Virus record (IMG/VR): IMGVR_UViG_3300015265_000001
Span: 1-64,000 of that record
DNA: 64,000 nt
Strand: one strand, 5' to 3'
Shown here: one piece after another, positions 1,142 to 64,000 of the stretch
Numbering within the stretch: the first letter of the stretch is position 1
How the letters are laid out: each line of letters opens with the position of its first letter
The notes under the pieces: model-generated
The model's input: the letters and a program-made list of their open reading frames with translations, nothing else
What the model was told of the DNA's origin: nothing
The model's database searches: none
Program-made: the position numbers and the translations under genes

Positions 1142-3988
1142 TTAACAAAAGAGGGAAAGGACGCCGTTGCTCATTTGCAGTGGGCGGCCAATAGGTTCGT
1201 CGCTAATATCCAGGCACTCTTCACCCGTCACGTTGGCAAACGCCACCTGACCGTCCATACGACCCATCAAGACGTCCACCTGTTCTTTACTCCAGGCAAG
1301 GATGTCCAGACTGCGTGTGGTGATGTTGAGCTTGTTACCGGTGTCCATATCCAACATACGGAAGAAGCATTGAGTTGCGTCTTGGCCCGTACGCCAGATA
1401 CGACCTTTTACTTGTCGCAATTCGTTTTCCCTGAACGGGGAATCCAGTCCAATGATCTGGTTAGCCATTAGCAACGGGTAACCTTCTTTCAGACTATTGT
1501 ACACAGCTACCAGTGGGTTGGTCTTAGGGTCTTCATCGAACTGCTTGATGGTAGGTTCCCGATCACTGCTGTTCTCACCGTACACCGATACAGGCTTGTA
1601 GCCCTGGGCAGACAGATAGTCAACCGAGAGTTTCAAGGCTTCCACGTAAGAAGTAAAGATTACGGTCTTCTTCTCAACGTCGTCGATGAACTTAGGCAAC
1701 TCAGCGTACGCAATCAGATCTTTAATCGCATTGATGCGAGCACGACCCAATACGTTACCCAAAGCCTCACCACGGATCTTCAATGCCAAGTACTTAACAG
1801 CCGATTTCACATTACGGAACTCAGCCAGTTCAGGACCTTTAAGACCGCGCTCGATATCCTCCTCTACAGCCTTACAGAAGGCGCTGTCAGCCGCGTCCGT
1901 GAAGTTGTTATACCCTTGGGAGCGGAACCGATTAACGATCGCCTTGTAGCGTTGTAGAGCGGCCAGCTCTTTAGGCTGTTTGAGGATCGTAAACTCATAG
2001 CGCTGGACAACATCGTTATAGAACACGATAAAGTCGGCCATGTGTGCATTGTAGAAACGGACTCGGTCTACAATGTAGGTCTGCATCTCCAGACGGATAG
2101 CATCAAGCGTGTACTTTTCCCCGTTAGGGATTTTAACCTTGATGATCTCAAACGGAGGAGGATCACCCATACCAGCCAGTTCGGGGATCGAGAACTTACC
2201 TCGACCAATACGGTTGGCCAACAATGCCATCAACGCAGGACGGTTACGTCCATAGCTCGCCATGAAGAACTCTCTGGCGGTCTTGTCGAAGTGTTTGTCG
2301 ATAAGGCAGGTGATAGGGAAGATCTCACTCCCAAGCGCCTTCAGCGGCGTCCCAGACATCGGTAGCGCATCTTCAAACAACCCATCATCAGCTAACTCAA
2401 CCAAGCGACGAGTTTGCTTAGACTTAATGTCGTTGAAGTTATGCGACTCATCGAGGATAAGGGAAAACTTCGCCTTGTTACGCTTCATCGCCTCATTGAA
2501 CCACTTACGCAGATGATCGTAGTGATTGCCCTGGAGGAACTCGTAGTGGATGATGTAGTAGTCGTAATCGTCTGTTAGCAAACGACCCGACGTAGACGTC
2601 CACACGCGCGGCATCTCCTTCATGCGTTTCGTCATATTGCCAATCCAAACTTCCTCCACAATGTTCAGAGGGCAAATGATGATGCATTTGTTATCGCTAA
2701 CCAGCACCGACCACATCAGTGACGTCACGGTGTTGTGAGTGACGATCCAGTTATCAACAATGTAGAGATGGTCTTCACTGTCAATGCTGATGCAGGCTGT
2801 TTCGATCTGAGGCTGCTGCTGGATGGCCACGATCTTCAGCTTAAGCTTCATGTACTGGGTAACGTCGAGGATATTCCCCAGCGACTCCAGTATTAAACTG
2901 TCGACCAGCCACACCATATCACGGTGCTTGAAGTTAACCTTATACAGGTCTCCAAAGGGTTCAAGGTTAGCAACCCCTCCCAAGCTCCAGATAACCTTCT
3001 GGAAGTTGCTGGCCCCGTAAGCGTTGTCCGTAATAACTGACACGCCTACCTCGGACAGATGGCACCCTGATTGCTCGATCATGTGCTTAGCAATCTGACG
3101 ACGATCCACGTAGGAAAGTTCTGTCACTGGGTGTGCCATATGTATACCAGCAGTCAGCAGACCCGTGGCAATCTGTACCAGGTCCAGGCCGGATGGTTCT
3201 ACTGTGTCACCTACATCCCCTACCAACGGGATATGGTAACTGAACTGATCGAAGTGGTTAACGATGTCTTTGGTAGTGGTTACGTGGGTTTGTCCCACGG
3301 CATTACCATCTTCGTCAAACCCTGACTCGGCCACTTCCCACAGGTGCAATGGATGGGAGTCAGCAGTACGGCCGTCTTCAAAGGTAAAGCGGAAACTCTC
3401 GGTCACACCTTGGGGGAAGTAACCTGTGACATTGGCAACGTTCCCTTTGGGTCCTATCACCTGGTCACCTATCTTAAGGTCACCAAGACGTTTCCAGCCG
3501 CCCGGTACCTTTACCTGTGTACTCAGGGGCATTGCCTTACCACTACCCACCGCAGCATCCAGCAGCAATCCTTTAAGGTGATAGCTGGGTTTAACGATGG
3601 GGTATTGTTCCAGGAACTCACGTTGTTTAGGGAAAGGAGTAACGTTAAAACGCTCCAGTTTCTTGAAGTCGAACTGTTTACCTACGGGGTTGACAGTATC
3701 TTTAATCCAGGTTTCAGTTTCCAGCAGGTGTTTTAATTCTGCCAGCTCTCTACGACGACTACGAAGATTACGAACCTTTAGCAGTTCACCCAGGGCGATG
3801 TGTAATTCCACCAGAAAGAAGTTATGAACCTTGATGGTGTCCCAGGTCTCTCTACGGATCTGCCATTTGGTGATCAGTGAGCTGCTGTAGAACTTTTCGA
3901 TGTCTCGTGCTAGTGCGCCGTATGAAACTCCTGTGATATGTACATACACCCCAGTTTGCTTTACAGCAACTGAAAAGAAGTTAAACAT
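1142..3988 (-). CDS. SF2 (SNF2/DEAD-like) helicase, intein-containing
   Basis: Walker A AVGSGK|T is split by an intein. Also present: ILDESH (motif II), MSGTP (motif III), SLKEGYPL (V) and QVKGRIWRTGQ (VI). Start reassigned to ATG at 3988, which has a GGAGG RBS. Confidence 0.9.
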   Translation of the reverse strand: MFNFFSVAVKQTGVYVHITGVSYGALARDIEKFYSSSLITKWQIRRETWDTIKVHNFFLVELHIALGELLKVRNLRSRRRELAELKHLLETETWIKDTVNPVGKQFDFKKLERFNVTPFPKQREFLEQYPIVKPSYHLKGLLLDAAVGSGKAMPLSTQVKVPGGWKRLGDLKIGDQVIGPKGNVANVTGYFPQGVTESFRFTFEDGRTADSHPLHLWEVAESGFDEDGNAVGQTHVTTTKDIVNHFDQFSYHIPLVGDVGDTVEPSGLDLVQIATGLLTAGIHMAHPVTELSYVDRRQIAKHMIEQSGCHLSEVGVSVITDNAYGASNFQKVIWSLGGVANLEPFGDLYKVNFKHRDMVWLVDSLILESLGNILDVTQYMKLKLKIVAIQQQPQIETACISIDSEDHLYIVDNWIVTHNTVTSLMWSVLVSDNKCIIICPLNIVEEVWIGNMTKRMKEMPRVWTSTSGRLLTDDYDYYIIHYEFLQGNHYDHLRKWFNEAMKRNKAKFSLILDESHNFNDIKSKQTRRLVELADDGLFEDALPMSGTPLKALGSEIFPITCLIDKHFDKTAREFFMASYGRNRPALMALLANRIGRGKFSIPELAGMGDPPPFEIIKVKIPNGEKYTLDAIRLEMQTYIVDRVRFYNAHMADFIVFYNDVVQRYEFTILKQPKELAALQRYKAIVNRFRSQGYNNFTDAADSAFCKAVEEDIERGLKGPELAEFRNVKSAVKYLALKIRGEALGNVLGRARINAIKDLIAYAELPKFIDDVEKKTVIFTSYVEALKLSVDYLSAQGYKPVSVYGENSSDREPTIKQFDEDPKTNPLVAVYNSLKEGYPLLMANQIIGLDSPFRENELRQVKGRIWRTGQDATQCFFRMLDMDTGNKLNITTRSLDILAWSKEQVDVLMGRMDGQVAFANVTGEECLDISDEPIGRPLQMSNGVLSLFC
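2732..3535 (-). mobile_element. Class-3 intein (268 aa, Ala1) in the helicase Walker A, with a decayed LAGLIDADG remnant
   Basis: GK|AMPLSTQVKVPGGWKRLGDLKIGDQV…SHPLHLW…ETACISIDSEDHLYIVDNWIVTHN|T. It shows the block B Trp, block F Cys and block G Thr (WCT motif) and the HN|T splice junction. Confidence 0.9.
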
Positions 3989-47243: not shown

Positions 47244-48146
47244 TTAACCCAGGTAGTCGCCGTTTTCGACGGTCGCTTTCGCTTGCGTCATACGTTCGAT
47301 GGTCCCCGCGTTGGTCAGGTTTTCCAGTACCGAAGTACGTTCCTGGAAGCCTACCGGCGCCGTCACTGCGTCAGGGTTGAACAGTGGCAGGAGTTGCAGC
47401 ATTTTGCGAGCGATCTGTTTCACCGCGAGGGTGTCCATTTCGATCACACCGGTGAATTCCATCTCGATGGAGCGGATCTGGTTTTCATCGGCTTTGTTGC
47501 GCTTGATCTCGATCGGAACGGTCGTGGTCGGCTGGCCCGCTACCAGGATCGCGGCGTGAGCTACGTCCTTCATGTTGCGGGTTGGCTCGAAGTAGATCGC
47601 CGAGTACGAGGTGTCGTCGAGCAGCATGTCGCCCGGATCGTCCAGAATCACCATTTTGGCGTTCAGGATTTCGGGGTCCATTACACCCCAACGCGACCAG
47701 GTCTTCAACATGTGGGTGAATACTTCACCTTCCACGTCGTAGGCCTTGTGGGTCACGCTACCCAGGCTGCGGGTAGCACCGGTTGCCACCGACATTTTGT
47801 GACCCGTCCACTCCATCGAACCGAAGTTGATTTCAGTGGAGTCACGGATGCCGCTCCATTCCTGCGAACGGTTCTCGAAGAACGCCTTGCACAGGGAATG
47901 AAGTTTGTTACCGCCCGGCAGACGGGAGAAGAACCCCGGGGTGCTCAGGACGATACACCAGCCCTGTTGAGACACATGTGGCTGAGCCGACATGTACTCG
48001 AATACGTTCCCGGCCCAACCGTACATGCCACCGGCGTCGCCATCGATAACGGGACGATTACCGAGGTCAAGGGCCTCGACAAACGGATCGCTCGACGGCA
48101 TCAGCGTGGTGTCTGTACGGTGCGGGTAGTTAGTATCAGCTGCCAT
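47244..48146 (-). CDS. Tail tube protein (phiKZ gp30-like)
   Basis: 300 aa directly downstream of the sheath; W.RWGVMDPE and YFEPT motifs; highly biased codons. Confidence 0.8.
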   Translation of the reverse strand: MAADTNYPHRTDTTLMPSSDPFVEALDLGNRPVIDGDAGGMYGWAGNVFEYMSAQPHVSQQGWCIVLSTPGFFSRLPGGNKLHSLCKAFFENRSQEWSGIRDSTEINFGSMEWTGHKMSVATGATRSLGSVTHKAYDVEGEVFTHMLKTWSRWGVMDPEILNAKMVILDDPGDMLLDDTSYSAIYFEPTRNMKDVAHAAILVAGQPTTTVPIEIKRNKADENQIRSIEMEFTGVIEMDTLAVKQIARKMLQLLPLFNPDAVTAPVGFQERTSVLENLTNAGTIERMTQAKATVENGDYLG

Positions 48147-61188: not shown

Positions 61189-62658
61189 TTACTCAAAATA
61201 ATCCTTGCTCAGGATACGCAGCACAATGTACAGACACAGTGCGGTGCGTACCAGTTGCACGGTTTGTTGGGTTTTAACGCCCGTACGTTCTTTGACGATC
61301 TCGTCGCCAAGGGTTCGGATAACCTTTACGGTATCGTTCTTGCTACGAGGAGCCCCGTAGGCACCACGCATTTTCACCAAGACGTCATACACGTTGGTTT
61401 TCTTAATACCATTGGTGTGCAGGTATTCAAACATGTGCTGAAGTACTGCATCAGCAAACTGTTTGTATTCCGGTTTCTTCGGGTTGTTGTACAGCGCAGG
61501 AAACTGCTGAATCACATACGCCAACTTATCCCGAGGAGTGCCTTCCAGCGCATCTGCCGAATACTTGATCAGCTCGTCCTTGTAAAACGAGGTTTCTTCG
61601 GTGAGGATGCGATCGAGGTAAAGACCGTACTGGGTAACTTCTTTGGTCTGAGACTTCAGCGCCAGTTCATCGCCCAGGTTTACCTTAGCCCCGTCGATGC
61701 GCACGATGTCGAGTTTGTTCTTGACGTCGTGGAAGACCTTGTTGATGTCGTTGATCGCCCGACGCAACCGGTTCTGGATATCCCCGACCATGTAGACGAT
61801 TTTCTTGTCGTCGTCCATTTTGGTGAAAGCGTCGTAGTGGATACCGGTCTTTGGGTTGATGATGAACTCAGCCCGCGCCTCGATCAATGCCCGCCAGCTG
61901 CCGTAACGCTTGATGTCGTATTTCAGACTCAGGCGGTTGTAGGTCTCCATCACGACTTCTTTGCGAGCCATGAACGGATAGTCGTTGTGAATGATCGAGG
62001 TCAAACACTTGTAGTGATACATCGACAAGATATCGATCATCGCCTGGTGCTTGGTGTCCTTGCTCAGACTCGACTTGTTGACCCGGTACAGCAGGTATGG
62101 AATGGTCAGGTTGAAGGTATCACCCACAACACTCCATTCCTTGTTCACCGCTTTGGCTGCGTGGAGGTTCTCTTTGAGTTCCTCTTCGTCGACGTCAAAG
62201 ATCTCAGAGAACCACTGGTTACGGTCCGCTGTGGTGAAGGTGATCTTGTGCAGTCCCAGGTAGGGAGAACCGAAGAACTCCATATGGCTGACCACGCCCA
62301 CGCTGCGGGTTACGAATGCATACACGTAACGACGCAGTGCCTTGGCCCACTTCTCATCCACAACCAAGAAGTCGCCGAACTTGTTGCAGATGTCGAGGAT
62401 GGCGTGGTTGGTTTCGAAGTTGACGTCCTTCAGCAGAGCCTCGGCGCCGGTTACCGATTGGATCTCGTTGTTATCCAACGGATACAGGTAAAGACCACCC
62501 TGCGCCAGGATGCTGTGTTGTTCCATCCCTTCGAACAGACTGAGTACGTCTTCATTCAGATAGTTGAGACGATCCCAGTATTCACGTTCAGCCGATTCGG
62601 CCGCTCGATTGCTACTGAGGTCCTCCGGGTTGTACTGTTTCGGTAAAGTGGCGAACAT
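61189..62658 (-). CDS. Conserved jumbo-phage protein, probably a virion head protein
   Basis: 489 aa; acidic N-terminal propeptide-like segment ending VTGAE|A (E73); HMEFFGSPYLG and L.LKYDIKRYGSW motifs. Confidence 0.65.
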   Translation of the reverse strand: MFATLPKQYNPEDLSSNRAAESAEREYWDRLNYLNEDVLSLFEGMEQHSILAQGGLYLYPLDNNEIQSVTGAEALLKDVNFETNHAILDICNKFGDFLVVDEKWAKALRRYVYAFVTRSVGVVSHMEFFGSPYLGLHKITFTTADRNQWFSEIFDVDEEELKENLHAAKAVNKEWSVVGDTFNLTIPYLLYRVNKSSLSKDTKHQAMIDILSMYHYKCLTSIIHNDYPFMARKEVVMETYNRLSLKYDIKRYGSWRALIEARAEFIINPKTGIHYDAFTKMDDDKKIVYMVGDIQNRLRRAINDINKVFHDVKNKLDIVRIDGAKVNLGDELALKSQTKEVTQYGLYLDRILTEETSFYKDELIKYSADALEGTPRDKLAYVIQQFPALYNNPKKPEYKQFADAVLQHMFEYLHTNGIKKTNVYDVLVKMRGAYGAPRSKNDTVKVIRTLGDEIVKERTGVKTQQTVQLVRTALCLYIVLRILSKDYFE

Positions 62659-63506
62659 CAGAATCTCCTTGGAACAGAGCGACGTACCGCGTCAGTCACA
62701 CGTTGACGATCACTGTAAGCCATGCGCTTGGTCCATTCAGTCGTGAGGTATTCATGGTAGTCCTTCCAGGCATCTCGGTATTCCAAGATATCGTCCTTGA
62801 TGTCGCTCAAACTGACACCACTACGGATGATGGCTTCCTGGGTAGGTCGGCGGCAGGTGCGATAGATATACGCCTTAACTGCCAGTTCCACGAGGTGAGC
62901 AAAGTGTTCATGTTGGCGTGTCGAAATACTGCTCAAACCTTCGTCATACTCCAGGATCATTTTGGCCGACATCGAGTAAGTACCCGAGTTCAAACCAAAG
63001 ATCACGAAGCAGTTGTTGCCGGTCATGTGGATGTTGTTGTAAGTCACCGGCATCTGACGGTTGGAACTGAGGCTGTCGATCAACGCTTCAGTCATGTCCG
63101 TGATCGAGCCCTGACCGCACATGTCGTTGGTATTGGTGCTCATGCCCAGCATACCAGTCGACGAGGTCATCGAACCCAGGTAGATCTCGGTAACCGAAAT
63201 GATCTTGCGACCACCGGTAACGATATCCGGTACGTTGACTTCGATGCAGGCGTTACCCAAGTCGCGGATACGAGCGCCGCTCAGGTCAATGAACTCAGTC
63301 TTACCGCCGTTGGCATTGCAAGCCGGCAGTACAGTACGGTGAATCACTTTCTCACGAATGCCTTGCTCCACGGTGGTGTGGTTCACAAGGTTGTACCAGT
63401 TGCCTGCGAAGTTACCGTTGGGGGCTTCGAAAGCAAGTTTAAGCAGGTAGTCGTCGATGTCACAGTTCGTGACCCGATTGATGGCATAGTCCACCGCATT
63501 ACTCAT
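62658..63506 (-). CDS. Virion structural protein (phiKZ gp32-like)
   Basis: MSNAVDYAI…I…LKLAF, V…VLP.CN..GG and LVELAVKAYIY motifs; GGAG RBS. Confidence 0.65.
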   Translation of the reverse strand: MSNAVDYAINRVTNCDIDDYLLKLAFEAPNGNFAGNWYNLVNHTTVEQGIREKVIHRTVLPACNANGGKTEFIDLSGARIRDLGNACIEVNVPDIVTGGRKIISVTEIYLGSMTSSTGMLGMSTNTNDMCGQGSITDMTEALIDSLSSNRQMPVTYNNIHMTGNNCFVIFGLNSGTYSMSAKMILEYDEGLSSISTRQHEHFAHLVELAVKAYIYRTCRRPTQEAIIRSGVSLSDIKDDILEYRDAWKDYHEYLTTEWTKRMAYSDRQRVTDAVRRSVPRRF

Positions 63507-64000
63507 GACGTGTCACTCCTGGAGACGGTGTAAATAATTTGGTTTAAGAGGGGTCATAGCATCCCTTTCGGGAGTGATTAACCGAAAGGTACTGACCCTC
63601 TAAAATCGTCTTAAACAACGATGTTTTTCAAACTGGTACCTTAGGGTATCCAGCATGGAGAAAGCTGCTAGGAAACGTTCCTAGGTGGGTTAAAATCGAT
63701 CTTGAGATGAACTCAGGGGTCAGTATAAACCCTCCCACAAAGTCTCCCATTTAAATCTCATCTCACCTATATATTCTATTTGAGATCGGCCGCGGCGGCC
63801 GGGGGGCAAAGGGTATATTTTTGTTTTTCACAGTTCCTTCGGAAAACTTGTTAAGTTTTTATTTTGTCAATTGGCTAATTTCAAAGGAAATTCTTTTCCC
63901 TTCATTATTCGCGTACACGTGCGCGCACGCGCTCCGTGCGCTAAAGAACCTATTAATATATTTATATATTAATATTCTTTATTGCTTTTAAAGCTTTTAA
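63507..64000. other. Long non-coding region with a multi-hairpin element and an origin-like GC/AT segment
   Basis: No ORF of 60 aa or more; several inverted repeats; direct repeat TAAAATCG; an alternating purine-pyrimidine tract next to an AT-only palindrome. Confidence 0.6.

What the first reader, a model, noticed from the sequence alone, without database searches (positions are those of the whole stretch)
63564..63726. Compact multi-branched structured element (candidate ncRNA or ssDNA signal) in the only long non-coding region
Seen: a hairpin CCTTTCGG/CCGAAAGG (63564-63589) is followed by a ~11-bp closing stem GTACTGACCCT (63589-63599) / GGGGTCAGTAT (63716-63726). That stem encloses at least four internal hairpins: AAAATCGT…ACGATGTTTT; CTGGTACC-tta-GGGTATCCAG; the perfect CTAGGAA-acg-TTCCTAG; and CTTGAG-atgaa-CTCAGG. 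TAAAATCG(A)TCTT occurs twice (63601, 63691). Several mismatches resolve as G-U on the + strand. Inference: a ~160-nt multi-way-junction RNA, or a folded ssDNA signal for replication or packaging. It does not resemble a tRNA or a simple terminator.
Basis: partly seen in the sequence, partly recalled or inferred. Interest (0 to 1): 0.62.

Follow-up and report, generated by a model that had tools for sequence, protein, structure and literature searches.

The report
Structured non-coding leader, EL-like jumbo phage
A roughly 200-base non-coding stretch in front of a virion-protein operon of an EL-like jumbo phage keeps a four-way-junction fold in its close relatives.

Summary
The 163-nt stretch folds far better than shuffled sequence on both strands (z about -6.3).

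The window is the first 64 kb of a 227-kb EL-like jumbo phage. The element lies in the genome's longest intergenic region (63507-64127), between a late virion-protein gene (DUF7484, minus strand) and an early HslV-like gene (plus strand).

Ten related metagenomic phages carry a homologous element. Its sequence drifts at about the neutral rate, yet a closing helix plus three hairpins (63593-63713) and a separate hairpin (63564-63589) are kept. About 85% of pair cells stay paired, against 36-54% in slid controls.

G-U pairs and per-sequence z-scores mildly favour the minus (gene-sense) strand.

The element sits between a near-invariant TATAG block (63746-63787) and a phiKZ-type TATG late-promoter motif (predicted +1 at 63555).

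Best reading (about 0.4): a minus-strand structured leader or 5'UTR-type small RNA. No RNA data exist, so the strand, the transcript ends and the function are inferred. It matches no Rfam family, tRNA, MITE or ORF. Sister phages with 95% identical flanking genes carry a different, unstructured cassette.

The parts
63507..63555 (-). Predicted 49-nt 5' UTR of the DUF7484 virion-protein gene (ATG at 63506), with a GGAG ribosome-binding site.
   Evidence: ORF 62658-63506(-) matches PF24302/phrog_3179. The stretch is 81-92% identical in close relatives. The transcript start is inferred from the TATG motif.
63553..63562 (-). Late-promoter-like motif ATGCTATGAC. TATG lies at 63558-63555 and the predicted +1 G is at 63555.
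   Evidence: The motif ATG[CT]TAT(A)GA[CT] is found 33-74 nt upstream of the orthologous ATG in all 14 distinct relatives checked, including EL. It is also present in RisingSun, FishSpeaker and phiKZ gp28. In phiKZ, TATG with G as +1 is the nvRNAP late promoter (PMC4666361).
63564..63589 (-). Hairpin Ht (8-bp stem, 10-nt loop) abutting the late-promoter motif. Terminator or insulator candidate.
   Evidence: The hairpin is kept with changed sequence in relatives: 4 of 7 pairs change on both sides and 78% of cells pair. In L012/L013 it is followed by five T. A hairpin sits in the same position before GATGCTAT(A)G in RisingSun and FishSpeaker, where it ends the tail-tube operon. It is weak in L007, L008, L137 and L139 because of an A-C mismatch in minus sense.
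63593..63713 (-). Conserved core: a four-way junction made of closing helix P1/P2 and hairpins Ha, Hb and Hc.
   Evidence: RNAalifold consensus. Covariance model R1 hits this place at 115 bits, E = 3e-26, and nowhere else in the genome. 84.7-85.7% of cells pair, against 36-54% when partners are slid. The structure conservation index (SCI) is 0.77 for minus sense.
63698..63710 (-). 5' strand of closing helix P1/P2. It pairs with 63596-63607.
   Evidence: This is the best-kept helix: 93.6-93.9% of cells pair. Its exceptions are G-U in minus sense and never A-C (13:0).
63596..63607 (-). 3' strand of closing helix P1/P2, within the conserved word GCGATTTT.GA.GG.
63662..63691 (-). Hairpin Ha: the perfect CTAGGAA/TTCCTAG stem plus a G-U-containing extension.
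   Evidence: In the L012 type it is replaced by a different 9-bp hairpin with two G-U pairs in minus sense (-13.5 against -7.4 kcal/mol for the two strands).
63635..63650 (-). Hairpin Hb (GGTACC-type stem, 4-nt loop).
   Evidence: A shifted version survives in the L010-type cassette.
63608..63633 (-). Hairpin Hc. It is variable in sequence but the stem is kept.
Evidence: Three pairs change on both sides. The G-U to A-C ratio is 17:1.
63727..63745 (-). H5 region: a short, poorly conserved hairpin between the block and the core.
   Evidence: The strand preference is mixed; in L012/L013 it favours the plus strand.
63746..63787 (.). Near-invariant 42-bp block. On the minus strand it holds TATAG (63771-63767), a candidate upstream promoter with +1 near 63767. 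On the plus strand it loosely resembles the genome's early-promoter subclass.
   Evidence: It is 81-95% identical in relatives, and 76% of columns are invariant. The core is kept in L012/L013. The G-to-G distance to the late TATG is 212-214 nt in all nine homologues. The orientation is ambiguous.
63788..63800 (.). Short GC hairpin (GGCCGC/GCGGCC) next to a C/G run.
   Evidence: It stays GC-rich but variable in relatives. Its role is unknown.

Best explanation
The element is the body of a non-coding transcript, or long 5' leader, read from the window's MINUS strand. This is the same sense as the late virion-protein operon that begins at 63506.

Transcription would start at the conserved TATAG block (about 63767). 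The RNA would run about 200 nt through a weak 5' hairpin and fold into a four-way junction (63713-63593). It would end at, or read through, the hairpin at 63589-63564. That hairpin abuts the operon's own TATG late promoter (+1 about 63555).

The most likely role is cis-regulatory. The structured leader and terminal hairpin would decide how much upstream transcription enters the late operon, and would leave a stable short RNA. This resembles the 5'UTR-derived short RNAs mapped in phiKZ.

Shown here: the fold, its conservation, the flanking motifs and their spacing. Inferred: the transcription itself, the strand, the transcript ends and the function.
For: 1. The fold is real and conserved although the sequence drifts.
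- The core is only 65-72% identical to the relatives, close to the 60-67% identity of four-fold degenerate sites in the neighbouring gene. The flanks are 81-95% identical.
- Even so, 85.7% of pair cells stay paired, against 80.5 +/- 0.8 in shuffles (0 of 500) and 36-54% when partners are slid.
- Ten pairs change on both sides (similar). The core SCI is 0.77.

2. A long-range closing helix spanning about 95 nt is the best-kept helix (94% paired). That points to a single-stranded fold rather than a DNA palindrome. Its exceptions are all G-U in minus sense (13:0).

3. Other strand evidence favours minus sense.
- Across the seven close homologues there are 35 G-U cells against 9 A-C.
- Core z-scores are -1.4 to -4.3 in minus sense and +1.3 to -3.0 in plus sense. 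Minus sense is the more negative in 7 of 8 homologues, and it gives the same four-way topology in most of them.

4. Minus-sense transcription signals bracket the element.
- A TATAG in a near-invariant block lies 212-214 nt upstream of the late TATG in all nine homologues, despite internal indels.
- TATAG is strongly enriched between genes: 45 of 125 copies lie in the 5.6% of the genome that is non-coding.
- TATG with G as +1 is the phiKZ nvRNAP late promoter.

5. A hairpin directly before GATGCTAT(A)G also occurs in RisingSun and FishSpeaker, where it ends an upstream same-strand operon. In L012/L013 the hairpin is followed by five T. A terminator-like hairpin here implies upstream minus-sense transcription to stop.

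6. phiKZ makes abundant short (<250 nt) structured RNAs from 5' UTRs by premature termination (PMC10914365).
Against: - No RNA data exist. No public run that holds this DNA is an RNA library.
- The strand evidence is modest. In helices predicted on both strands, G-U and A-C counts are balanced. Counted by pairs rather than cells the ratio is 14:7, p = 0.19.
- The Ht and H5 hairpins favour the plus strand in some relatives.
- This genome's own element folds slightly better on the plus strand.
- The conserved block can also be read as a plus-strand early-type promoter, with ATTTAA, CCTATAT, TTGAGAT and then a hairpin. If so, the element lies upstream of both divergent promoters.
- Ht has no U-run in this clade and is weak in four relatives.
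- Only 6-10 pairs covary, and the pair-count measure is not significant (17-53 of 500 shuffles reach it).
- Sister phages with 95% identical flanking proteins carry a cassette with no significant fold (z about 0, SCI 0.45). The structure is therefore not needed to express the operon.
Confidence: 0.4

Rival explanations
1. It is a non-transcribed DNA element between two divergent promoters: the late TATG promoter on the minus strand and an early-type promoter in the conserved block on the plus strand. Its palindromes would act as DNA, either as binding sites for dimeric regulators or as cruciform-prone repeats that absorb the negative supercoiling made by divergent transcription.
For: On the plus strand the block shares four features with the genome's early-promoter subclass: an upstream ATTTAA, a CCTATAT core, TTGAGAT, and then a hairpin. 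A similar dual-reading site exists at 87950/87956. Ha is a perfect palindrome whose sequence is conserved in seven relatives. The fold is strong on both strands in this genome.
Against: The block fails two positions that are invariant in all of about 20 early-promoter sites and scores -15 on the subclass matrix. The HslV-like gene already has a canonical early promoter at 64057. The best-kept helix is a long-range one (about 95 nt apart) that a DNA palindrome cannot explain. About 13% of pair cells are G-T in one sense, which would be A-C on the other arm of a cruciform. Hc and the L012-type Ha keep a stem while changing sequence, which is unlike an operator.
Confidence: 0.17
2. It is a plus-strand structured RNA, as the first reader leaned towards. 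It would be antisense to the late promoter and 5' UTR region of the DUF7484 gene and would run towards the GC hairpin and T-rich tracts at 63786-63830.
For: In this genome the plus strand gives the lower energy (-62.4 against -54.5 kcal/mol). The G-T pairs of the outer stem fall on the plus strand. Ht in L007, L008, L137 and L139, and H5 in L012/L013, are more stable in plus sense. Hairpins followed by T-rich runs lie downstream in plus sense. The plus-sense SCI of 0.72 is only slightly lower than the minus-sense value.
Against: No promoter-like motif of either class lies on the plus strand to the left of the element. The outer stem is not conserved. In plus sense the closing helix would carry an A-C mismatch in nearly every homologue. 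Plus-sense z-scores are weaker in 7 of 8 homologues, and +1.3 in L012.
Confidence: 0.13
3. It is a folded single-stranded DNA signal that belongs to a replication origin. The multi-hairpin element would act as a priming or assembly site beside the AT-rich unwinding element flanked by GC clamps at 63908-64035.
For: It lies in the longest intergenic region of the genome with divergent transcription. An adjacent conserved AT-rich core sits inside GC-alternating inverted repeats, with a DNA fold z of -4.9. A strand-specific fold with G-T tolerance also fits ssDNA. Multi-hairpin single-strand initiation signals are known from plasmids and from phage G4 (my own knowledge, not tested here).
Against: Cumulative GC or AT skew shows no turn at this place. 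No iterons are conserved: the repeated word is specific to this genome. Sister phages with near-identical replication and flanking genes lack both the element and the AT/GC structure. Nothing is known about origins in this phage family.
Confidence: 0.12
4. It has no function of its own. It would be a hairpin-rich spacer left by the rearrangement that joined the DUF7484 operon to the early HslV/PhuZ region, with hairpins persisting by descent.
For: The core evolves at about the neutral rate. Covariation counts are small and partly inherited. Closely related phages do without it. It is restricted to one clade.
Against: At 28-35% divergence, random drift should break about half of the pairs, yet about 85% are kept. 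Hc and Ha have been rebuilt with new sequences. The length between the block and the late promoter is held at 212-214 nt despite indels. z-scores are negative in every homologue in minus sense.
Confidence: 0.13

Closest known systems
5'UTR-derived short non-coding RNAs of phiKZ and other Pseudomonas phages (ONT-cappable-seq; PMC10914365)
   Same: Both are short (<250 nt), structured and promoter-proximal. Both lie in front of a phage gene and are bounded by a hairpin. Both are conserved only among close relatives. Function is unknown in both cases.
   Different: Those RNAs were seen as transcripts, whereas this one is only predicted. Here the operon has its own promoter after the hairpin, so the unit looks more like a separate upstream transcription unit. 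There is no sequence similarity, and phiKZ has only 128 bp at the equivalent place.
phiKZ-type transcription signals: the nvRNAP late promoter TATG (+1 = G) and intrinsic terminators made of a C/G-rich hairpin plus TTAT
   Same: The TATG motif before the DUF7484 gene is conserved across the family, including phiKZ gp28. The genome has typical hairpin+TTAT(AG) terminators. The layout of a hairpin followed by a promoter motif is shared with RisingSun and FishSpeaker.
   Different: Ht is AU-richer than those terminators, lacks the TTAT or U tail in this clade, and is weak in four relatives. The upstream motif is TATAG rather than TATG. No start site has been mapped in any EL-like phage.
Single-strand initiation (ssi) signals and the phage G4 complementary-strand origin (my own knowledge, not tested here)
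   Same: Both are non-coding, multi-hairpin folds of about 100-150 nt on one strand, close to an AT-rich region.
   Different: Those act in ssDNA replicons or plasmids and recruit primase or PriA. Here there is no evidence of an origin, no skew signal, and sister phages lack the element.
tRNA-like cloverleaf (four-way junction)
   Same: The topology is the same: one closing helix and three hairpins.
   Different: The element is 121 nt rather than about 76. It has no T-loop or D-loop signatures. ARAGORN and the Rfam tRNA/tmRNA models find nothing.

Membership tests
Any Rfam 15 family | A covariance-model score at or near the family's gathering threshold | tested here: not met
   The best hits in the region are MIR1886 (19.9 bits against 62) and RAGATH-9 (16.5 against 75.2), with E > 0.5. 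No hit falls in the homologous element of eight relatives.
tRNA / tmRNA | A cloverleaf with an anticodon arm, detectable by ARAGORN | tested here: not met
   There are 0 such genes in the whole window.
phiKZ-type late (nvRNAP) promoter, for 63553-63562 | A TATG motif with G as the transcription start, upstream of a late gene | tested here: met
   TATG lies 49 nt before the ATG of a virion-protein gene and is conserved in all relatives and in phiKZ gp28. The definition comes from PMC4666361.
phiKZ-type late (nvRNAP) promoter, for 63553-63562 and the TATAG at 63767 | Transcripts start at the motif in vivo or in vitro | not testable with these tools
   No RNA run holds this DNA.
phiKZ-type intrinsic terminator, for hairpin 63564-63589 | A C-rich/G-rich stem-loop followed directly by TTAT or a U-rich tail | tested here: not met
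   The stem is CCUUUCGG/CCGAAAGG and is followed by GAUGC. Only L012/L013 carry a U5 tail.
5'UTR-derived ncRNA formed by premature termination | A promoter, a short structured RNA and a hairpin end, all upstream of a gene on the same strand | tested here: inconclusive
   The layout fits in minus sense. However, the promoter's orientation is ambiguous and no transcript has been seen.
Structured RNA in general | Helices are kept through compensatory change, beyond what sequence conservation alone gives | tested here: met
   85.7% of cells pair against 80.5 +/- 0.8 in shuffles (0 of 500). The covariation score is 0.231 against 0.162 (0 of 500). Slid controls give 36-54%. Ten pairs change on both sides, which 17 of 500 shuffles reach. 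The sample is small (9-10 related sequences), so the support is moderate.
MITE / small transposon | Terminal inverted repeats kept in all copies, several copies present, and a target-site duplication | tested here: not met
   The genome holds a single copy. The inverted ends exist only in this genome, while the interior is homologous in relatives.
Small protein-coding gene | An open frame conserved in relatives | tested here: not met
   The 40-aa minus-strand ORF (63628-63750) stops after 5-15 codons in relatives. The 66-aa antisense ORF of the L012 type has no counterpart here.
Replication origin | A skew switch, iterons, or mapped initiation | tested here: inconclusive
   There is no skew turn at 63.8 kb and there are no conserved iterons. 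An AT-rich core with GC clamps lies beside the element. Initiation cannot be mapped with these tools.

The most novel reading that the evidence does not exclude
The four-way-junction RNA is a new, clade-specific class of jumbo-phage regulatory RNA carried on a swappable intergenic cassette. It would either sense a protein or small molecule to gate entry of transcription into the late virion operon, or act in trans on host or phage targets, for example as a decoy during infection by nucleus-forming phages.
Probability: 0.12. Interest if true: 0.6.

Novelty: new member of a known kind. Interest (0 to 1): 0.36.

Why it matters
Non-coding RNAs of nucleus-forming jumbo phages are almost unstudied. 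A few candidates are known from phiKZ and none from the EL group.

This element is a concrete, bounded candidate. It has a testable fold, predicted 5' and 3' ends, and a natural control: sister phages with 95% identical neighbouring genes that carry an unstructured cassette at the same place.

If it is transcribed, it would allow a test of how the phage's own RNA polymerases handle tandem promoters, leaders and weak hairpin terminators. If it is not transcribed, the same region is a candidate origin or insulator in a family where neither has been mapped.

The practical value is modest, and the element is restricted to one metagenomic clade.

Tried and rejected
- Rfam at permissive thresholds, on the window region and on eight relatives: nothing.
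- tRNA/tmRNA scan: none.
- A second copy in the genome: none by blastn or by covariance model.
- INPHARED phage records by blastn: no DNA match.
- Two conserved DNA words scanned in IMG/VR: only contigs already known, plus chance hits.
- Covariance model R1 against EL, RisingSun, FishSpeaker, phiKZ, the L010-type cassette and more distant relatives: no homologue outside the WIN and L012 clades.
- MITE reading: rejected, because the inverted ends are not conserved and there is a single copy.
- Remnant of the tail-tube gene that precedes DUF7484 in RisingSun: no similarity; that gene lies at 47247-48134.
- Small ORFs: not conserved.
- GC and AT skew as an origin signal: no turn at this place.
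- Sigma-70 promoter and intrinsic terminator scan: nothing above background inside the element.
- Expression: the nine runs that hold this DNA are all DNA. Laying four of them showed relatives about 3% diverged, but the table was cut before the element, so no variants were gained.
- Published phiKZ start-site tables: no supplements are held, and the 2014 phiKZ transcriptome paper is not held.
- Strand test by shared helices only: balanced, so not decisive.
- My first shuffle script timed out. Its replacement under-randomises, so only the relative values are used.

Full report
CONTEXT

The window is bases 1-64000 of a 226,985-bp virus record. The gene ending the window on the minus strand (62658-63506) is a DUF7484/phrog_3179 protein. 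Its nearest named relatives are Pseudomonas phage EL (67% aa), Erwinia phages RisingSun and Joad, and Shewanella phage FishSpeaker.

The next gene, on the plus strand at 64128 and just outside the window, is an HslV-like peptidase. EL has the same divergent pair, gp014 and gp015. The gap between them (63507-64127, 621 bp) is the longest non-coding stretch of a genome that is 94% coding.

THE OBSERVATION

The 163 nt fold with z = -6.3 on either strand, and no shuffle of 200 does as well.

RELATIVES

Protein-guided searches of IMG/VR, JGI metagenomes and Logan/ENA assemblies gave three groups.

- Seven close homologues of the whole intergenic region: the window itself, L137, L009, L139, L007, L008 and L015. 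Their DUF7484 proteins are 95-98% identical.
- A second clade at 83% protein identity: L012, L013 and L151.
- One truncated near-identical copy, L134.

Four-fold degenerate sites of the flanking gene are only 60-67% identical between the window and the close set. That is the neutral yardstick. Against it the region splits as follows:

| Segment | Identity to the window |
|---|---|
| Late-promoter motif plus 5' UTR | 81-92% |
| 42-bp block at 63746-63787 | 81-95% |
| Element core (63590-63726) | 65-72% |
| Hairpin 63564-63589 | 50-77% |

The element's sequence therefore drifts at about the neutral rate.

The 11-bp outer stem and the CTTGAG/CTCAGG hairpin exist only in this genome. RNAalifold on the relatives gives four parts:

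- a closing helix P1/P2 (63698-63710 with 63596-63607)
- three hairpins: Ha (63662-63691), Hb (63635-63650) and Hc (63608-63633)
- a separate hairpin, Ht (63564-63589)

Only its pairing halves are conserved.

On nine sequences, 85.7% of pair cells form standard pairs. Column-preserving shuffles give 80.5 +/- 0.8 (0 of 500 reach the observed value). Sliding the partners gives 36-54%. Ten pairs change on both sides, which 17 of 500 shuffles reach. Searches give similar figures.

Hc has been rebuilt with different sequences in different lineages. Ha is replaced by an unrelated 9-bp hairpin in the L012 clade. The structure conservation index (SCI) of the core is 0.77.

The sample is small and related, and the structure was derived from these same sequences. 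I rate the structural support as moderate, not conclusive.

WHICH STRAND

Evidence for the minus (gene-sense) strand:

- In the closing helix the non-Watson-Crick cells are G-U in minus sense 13 times and A-C never. In Hc the ratio is 17:1.
- Over the seven close sequences the totals are 35 G-U against 9 A-C.
- Core z-scores are more negative in minus sense in 7 of 8 homologues. The mean is about -2.6 against -1.4, and L012 is +1.3 in plus sense. The minus-sense minimum-energy folds mostly show the same four-way junction.

Evidence against a clear call:

- Helices predicted on both strands show balanced G-U and A-C counts.
- By pairs the ratio is 14:7 (p = 0.19).
- Ht and H5 prefer the plus strand in some relatives.
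- The window's own copy folds a little better on the plus strand.

I take the minus strand as mildly favoured.

SIGNALS AROUND THE ELEMENT

Late promoter. A motif ATG[CT]TAT(A)GA[CT] lies 33-74 nt upstream of the orthologous start codon in every relative examined, including EL. It is also present in RisingSun, FishSpeaker and phiKZ gp28. In phiKZ, TATG with G as +1 is the late promoter of the non-virion RNA polymerase (PMC4666361). Here that predicts a start at 63555 (minus strand) and a 49-nt leader.

Hairpin Ht. It abuts this motif. In RisingSun and FishSpeaker a strong hairpin occupies the same place and ends the tail-tube operon. In L012/L013 the hairpin is followed by five T.

Upstream block. 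The near-invariant block contains TATAG on the minus strand. The G-to-G distance to the late TATG is 212-214 nt in all nine homologues despite internal indels. It is 211-223 nt in a second cassette type. TATAG is heavily enriched between genes: 45 of 125 copies. Part of that enrichment comes from phiKZ-type terminators, which are a hairpin plus TTAT.

Early promoters. These are easy to recognise in this genome. About 20 sites of one extended AT-rich motif are present, all on the plus strand. One at 64057 serves the HslV-like gene (EL's annotated promoter is the same kind; general rule in PMC7598289).

Ambiguity of the block. Read on the plus strand, it loosely resembles a subclass of these early sites, but it fails two invariant positions. 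Its orientation therefore remains ambiguous, and this is the main weakness of the favoured model.

THE MOSAIC

L010, L011, L014, L135, L141, L142 and L144 have 95% identical DUF7484 proteins and the same four-fold divergence. Their 470-480-bp intergenic cassette is different.

- That cassette has no significant fold (z about 0, SCI 0.45).
- It keeps only remnants of the element: a shifted Hb and one strand of the closing helix.
- It keeps an upstream TATATG/TATAGG motif and the late-promoter motif.

More distant relatives, including EL, have other, C-rich sequences at this place, and the covariance model finds nothing in them. The four-way junction is thus clade-specific and is not required to express the operon.

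WHAT IT IS NOT

- It is not an Rfam family, tRNA or tmRNA.
- It is not a repeat or MITE.
- It is not a conserved ORF.
- It is not a remnant of the tail-tube gene.
- There is no skew signal of an origin.
- No RNA library holds this DNA, and the DNA runs added nothing for the element.

VERDICT

The most likely reading (about 0.4) is a minus-strand structured leader or short non-coding RNA between a conserved upstream TATAG site and the late promoter of the virion operon. It would be comparable to the 5'UTR-derived short RNAs mapped in phiKZ (PMC10914365).

Rivals:

- a DNA-level element between divergent promoters (0.17)
- a plus-strand RNA (0.13)
- an ssDNA/origin signal acting with the neighbouring AT-rich structure (0.12)
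- a functionless spacer (0.13)

Transcription, strand, ends and function are all inferred. Only the fold, its conservation, the motifs and their spacing are shown here. It is a new member of a known kind and of moderate interest.

Noticed in passing
window 63908-64000, continuing to about 64035 in L001 (1902-2029): There is a second structured element in the same intergenic region. Alternating-GC inverted repeats (CGTGCGCGCACG type) enclose a 70-bp AT-rich core with two perfect or near-perfect AT palindromes. The DNA fold has z = -4.9. It is 74-94% conserved in close relatives and about 83% in the L012 clade, which is better than the finding itself. It could be an unwinding element or origin, a cruciform, or a bidirectional insulator.
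   Followed up: partly
whole genome G000, e.g. 15385, 39431, 44461 in the window; 64057 just outside it: About 20 intergenic copies of one extended AT-rich motif (TTTCAAACCTA.AT.A) are present, all on the plus strand. These are the presumed early (virion RNA polymerase) promoters. A subclass of five sites adds TTTAAGATACA upstream, and TGTGATTA plus a hairpin downstream (an AAGAC/GTCTT hairpin at three of the five: 44461, 138669 and 225169). Some sites point through small minus-strand genes.
   Followed up: partly
window 17652/17685 and 47200; genome 103326, 109420, 203228/203257, 210012, 210812: C-rich/G-rich hairpins flanked by TTATAG sit mostly at convergent gene ends. They match the phiKZ intrinsic-terminator motif (hairpin plus TTAT) reported from ONT-cappable-seq, and they explain part of the intergenic excess of TATAG.
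   Followed up: partly
loci L010, L011, L014, L135, L141, L142, L144 (upstream of the DUF7484 gene): The intergenic region is a swappable cassette. These phages share 95% identical flanking proteins with the window but carry an unrelated 470-480-bp cassette. In L141 and L147 an HNH-endonuclease-like gene replaces the HslV-like neighbour.
   Followed up: partly
L004 3175-3267 (RisingSun), L006 3403-3497 (FishSpeaker), L133 6209-6336 (phiKZ gp28 upstream): The module of a hairpin followed by (G)ATGCTAT(A)G precedes the DUF7484 orthologue in RisingSun and FishSpeaker. phiKZ gp28 carries the promoter-like motif (GATGTTATGAG) about 88 nt upstream of its start; no hairpin was checked there. This promoter-like word is unusually extended for a phiKZ-type late promoter and is conserved across genera.
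   Followed up: partly
genome 87950(+)/87956(-): A second divergent intergenic site has a CCTATAT...TTTGAGA word that, like the block at 63746-63787, can be read either as an early-type promoter on the plus strand or as TATAG on the minus strand. It may be a bidirectional promoter module.
   Followed up: no
L003 (EL) 3150-3350; L017, L020 upstream regions: EL and two metagenomic relatives carry a different conserved element at the equivalent place. A short stem encloses about 55 nt, flanked by C-rich runs (CCTCCCCC / ACCCCCTCC) on the gene-sense strand. In these phages the antisense strand folds better (z -2.2 to -4.0).
   Followed up: no
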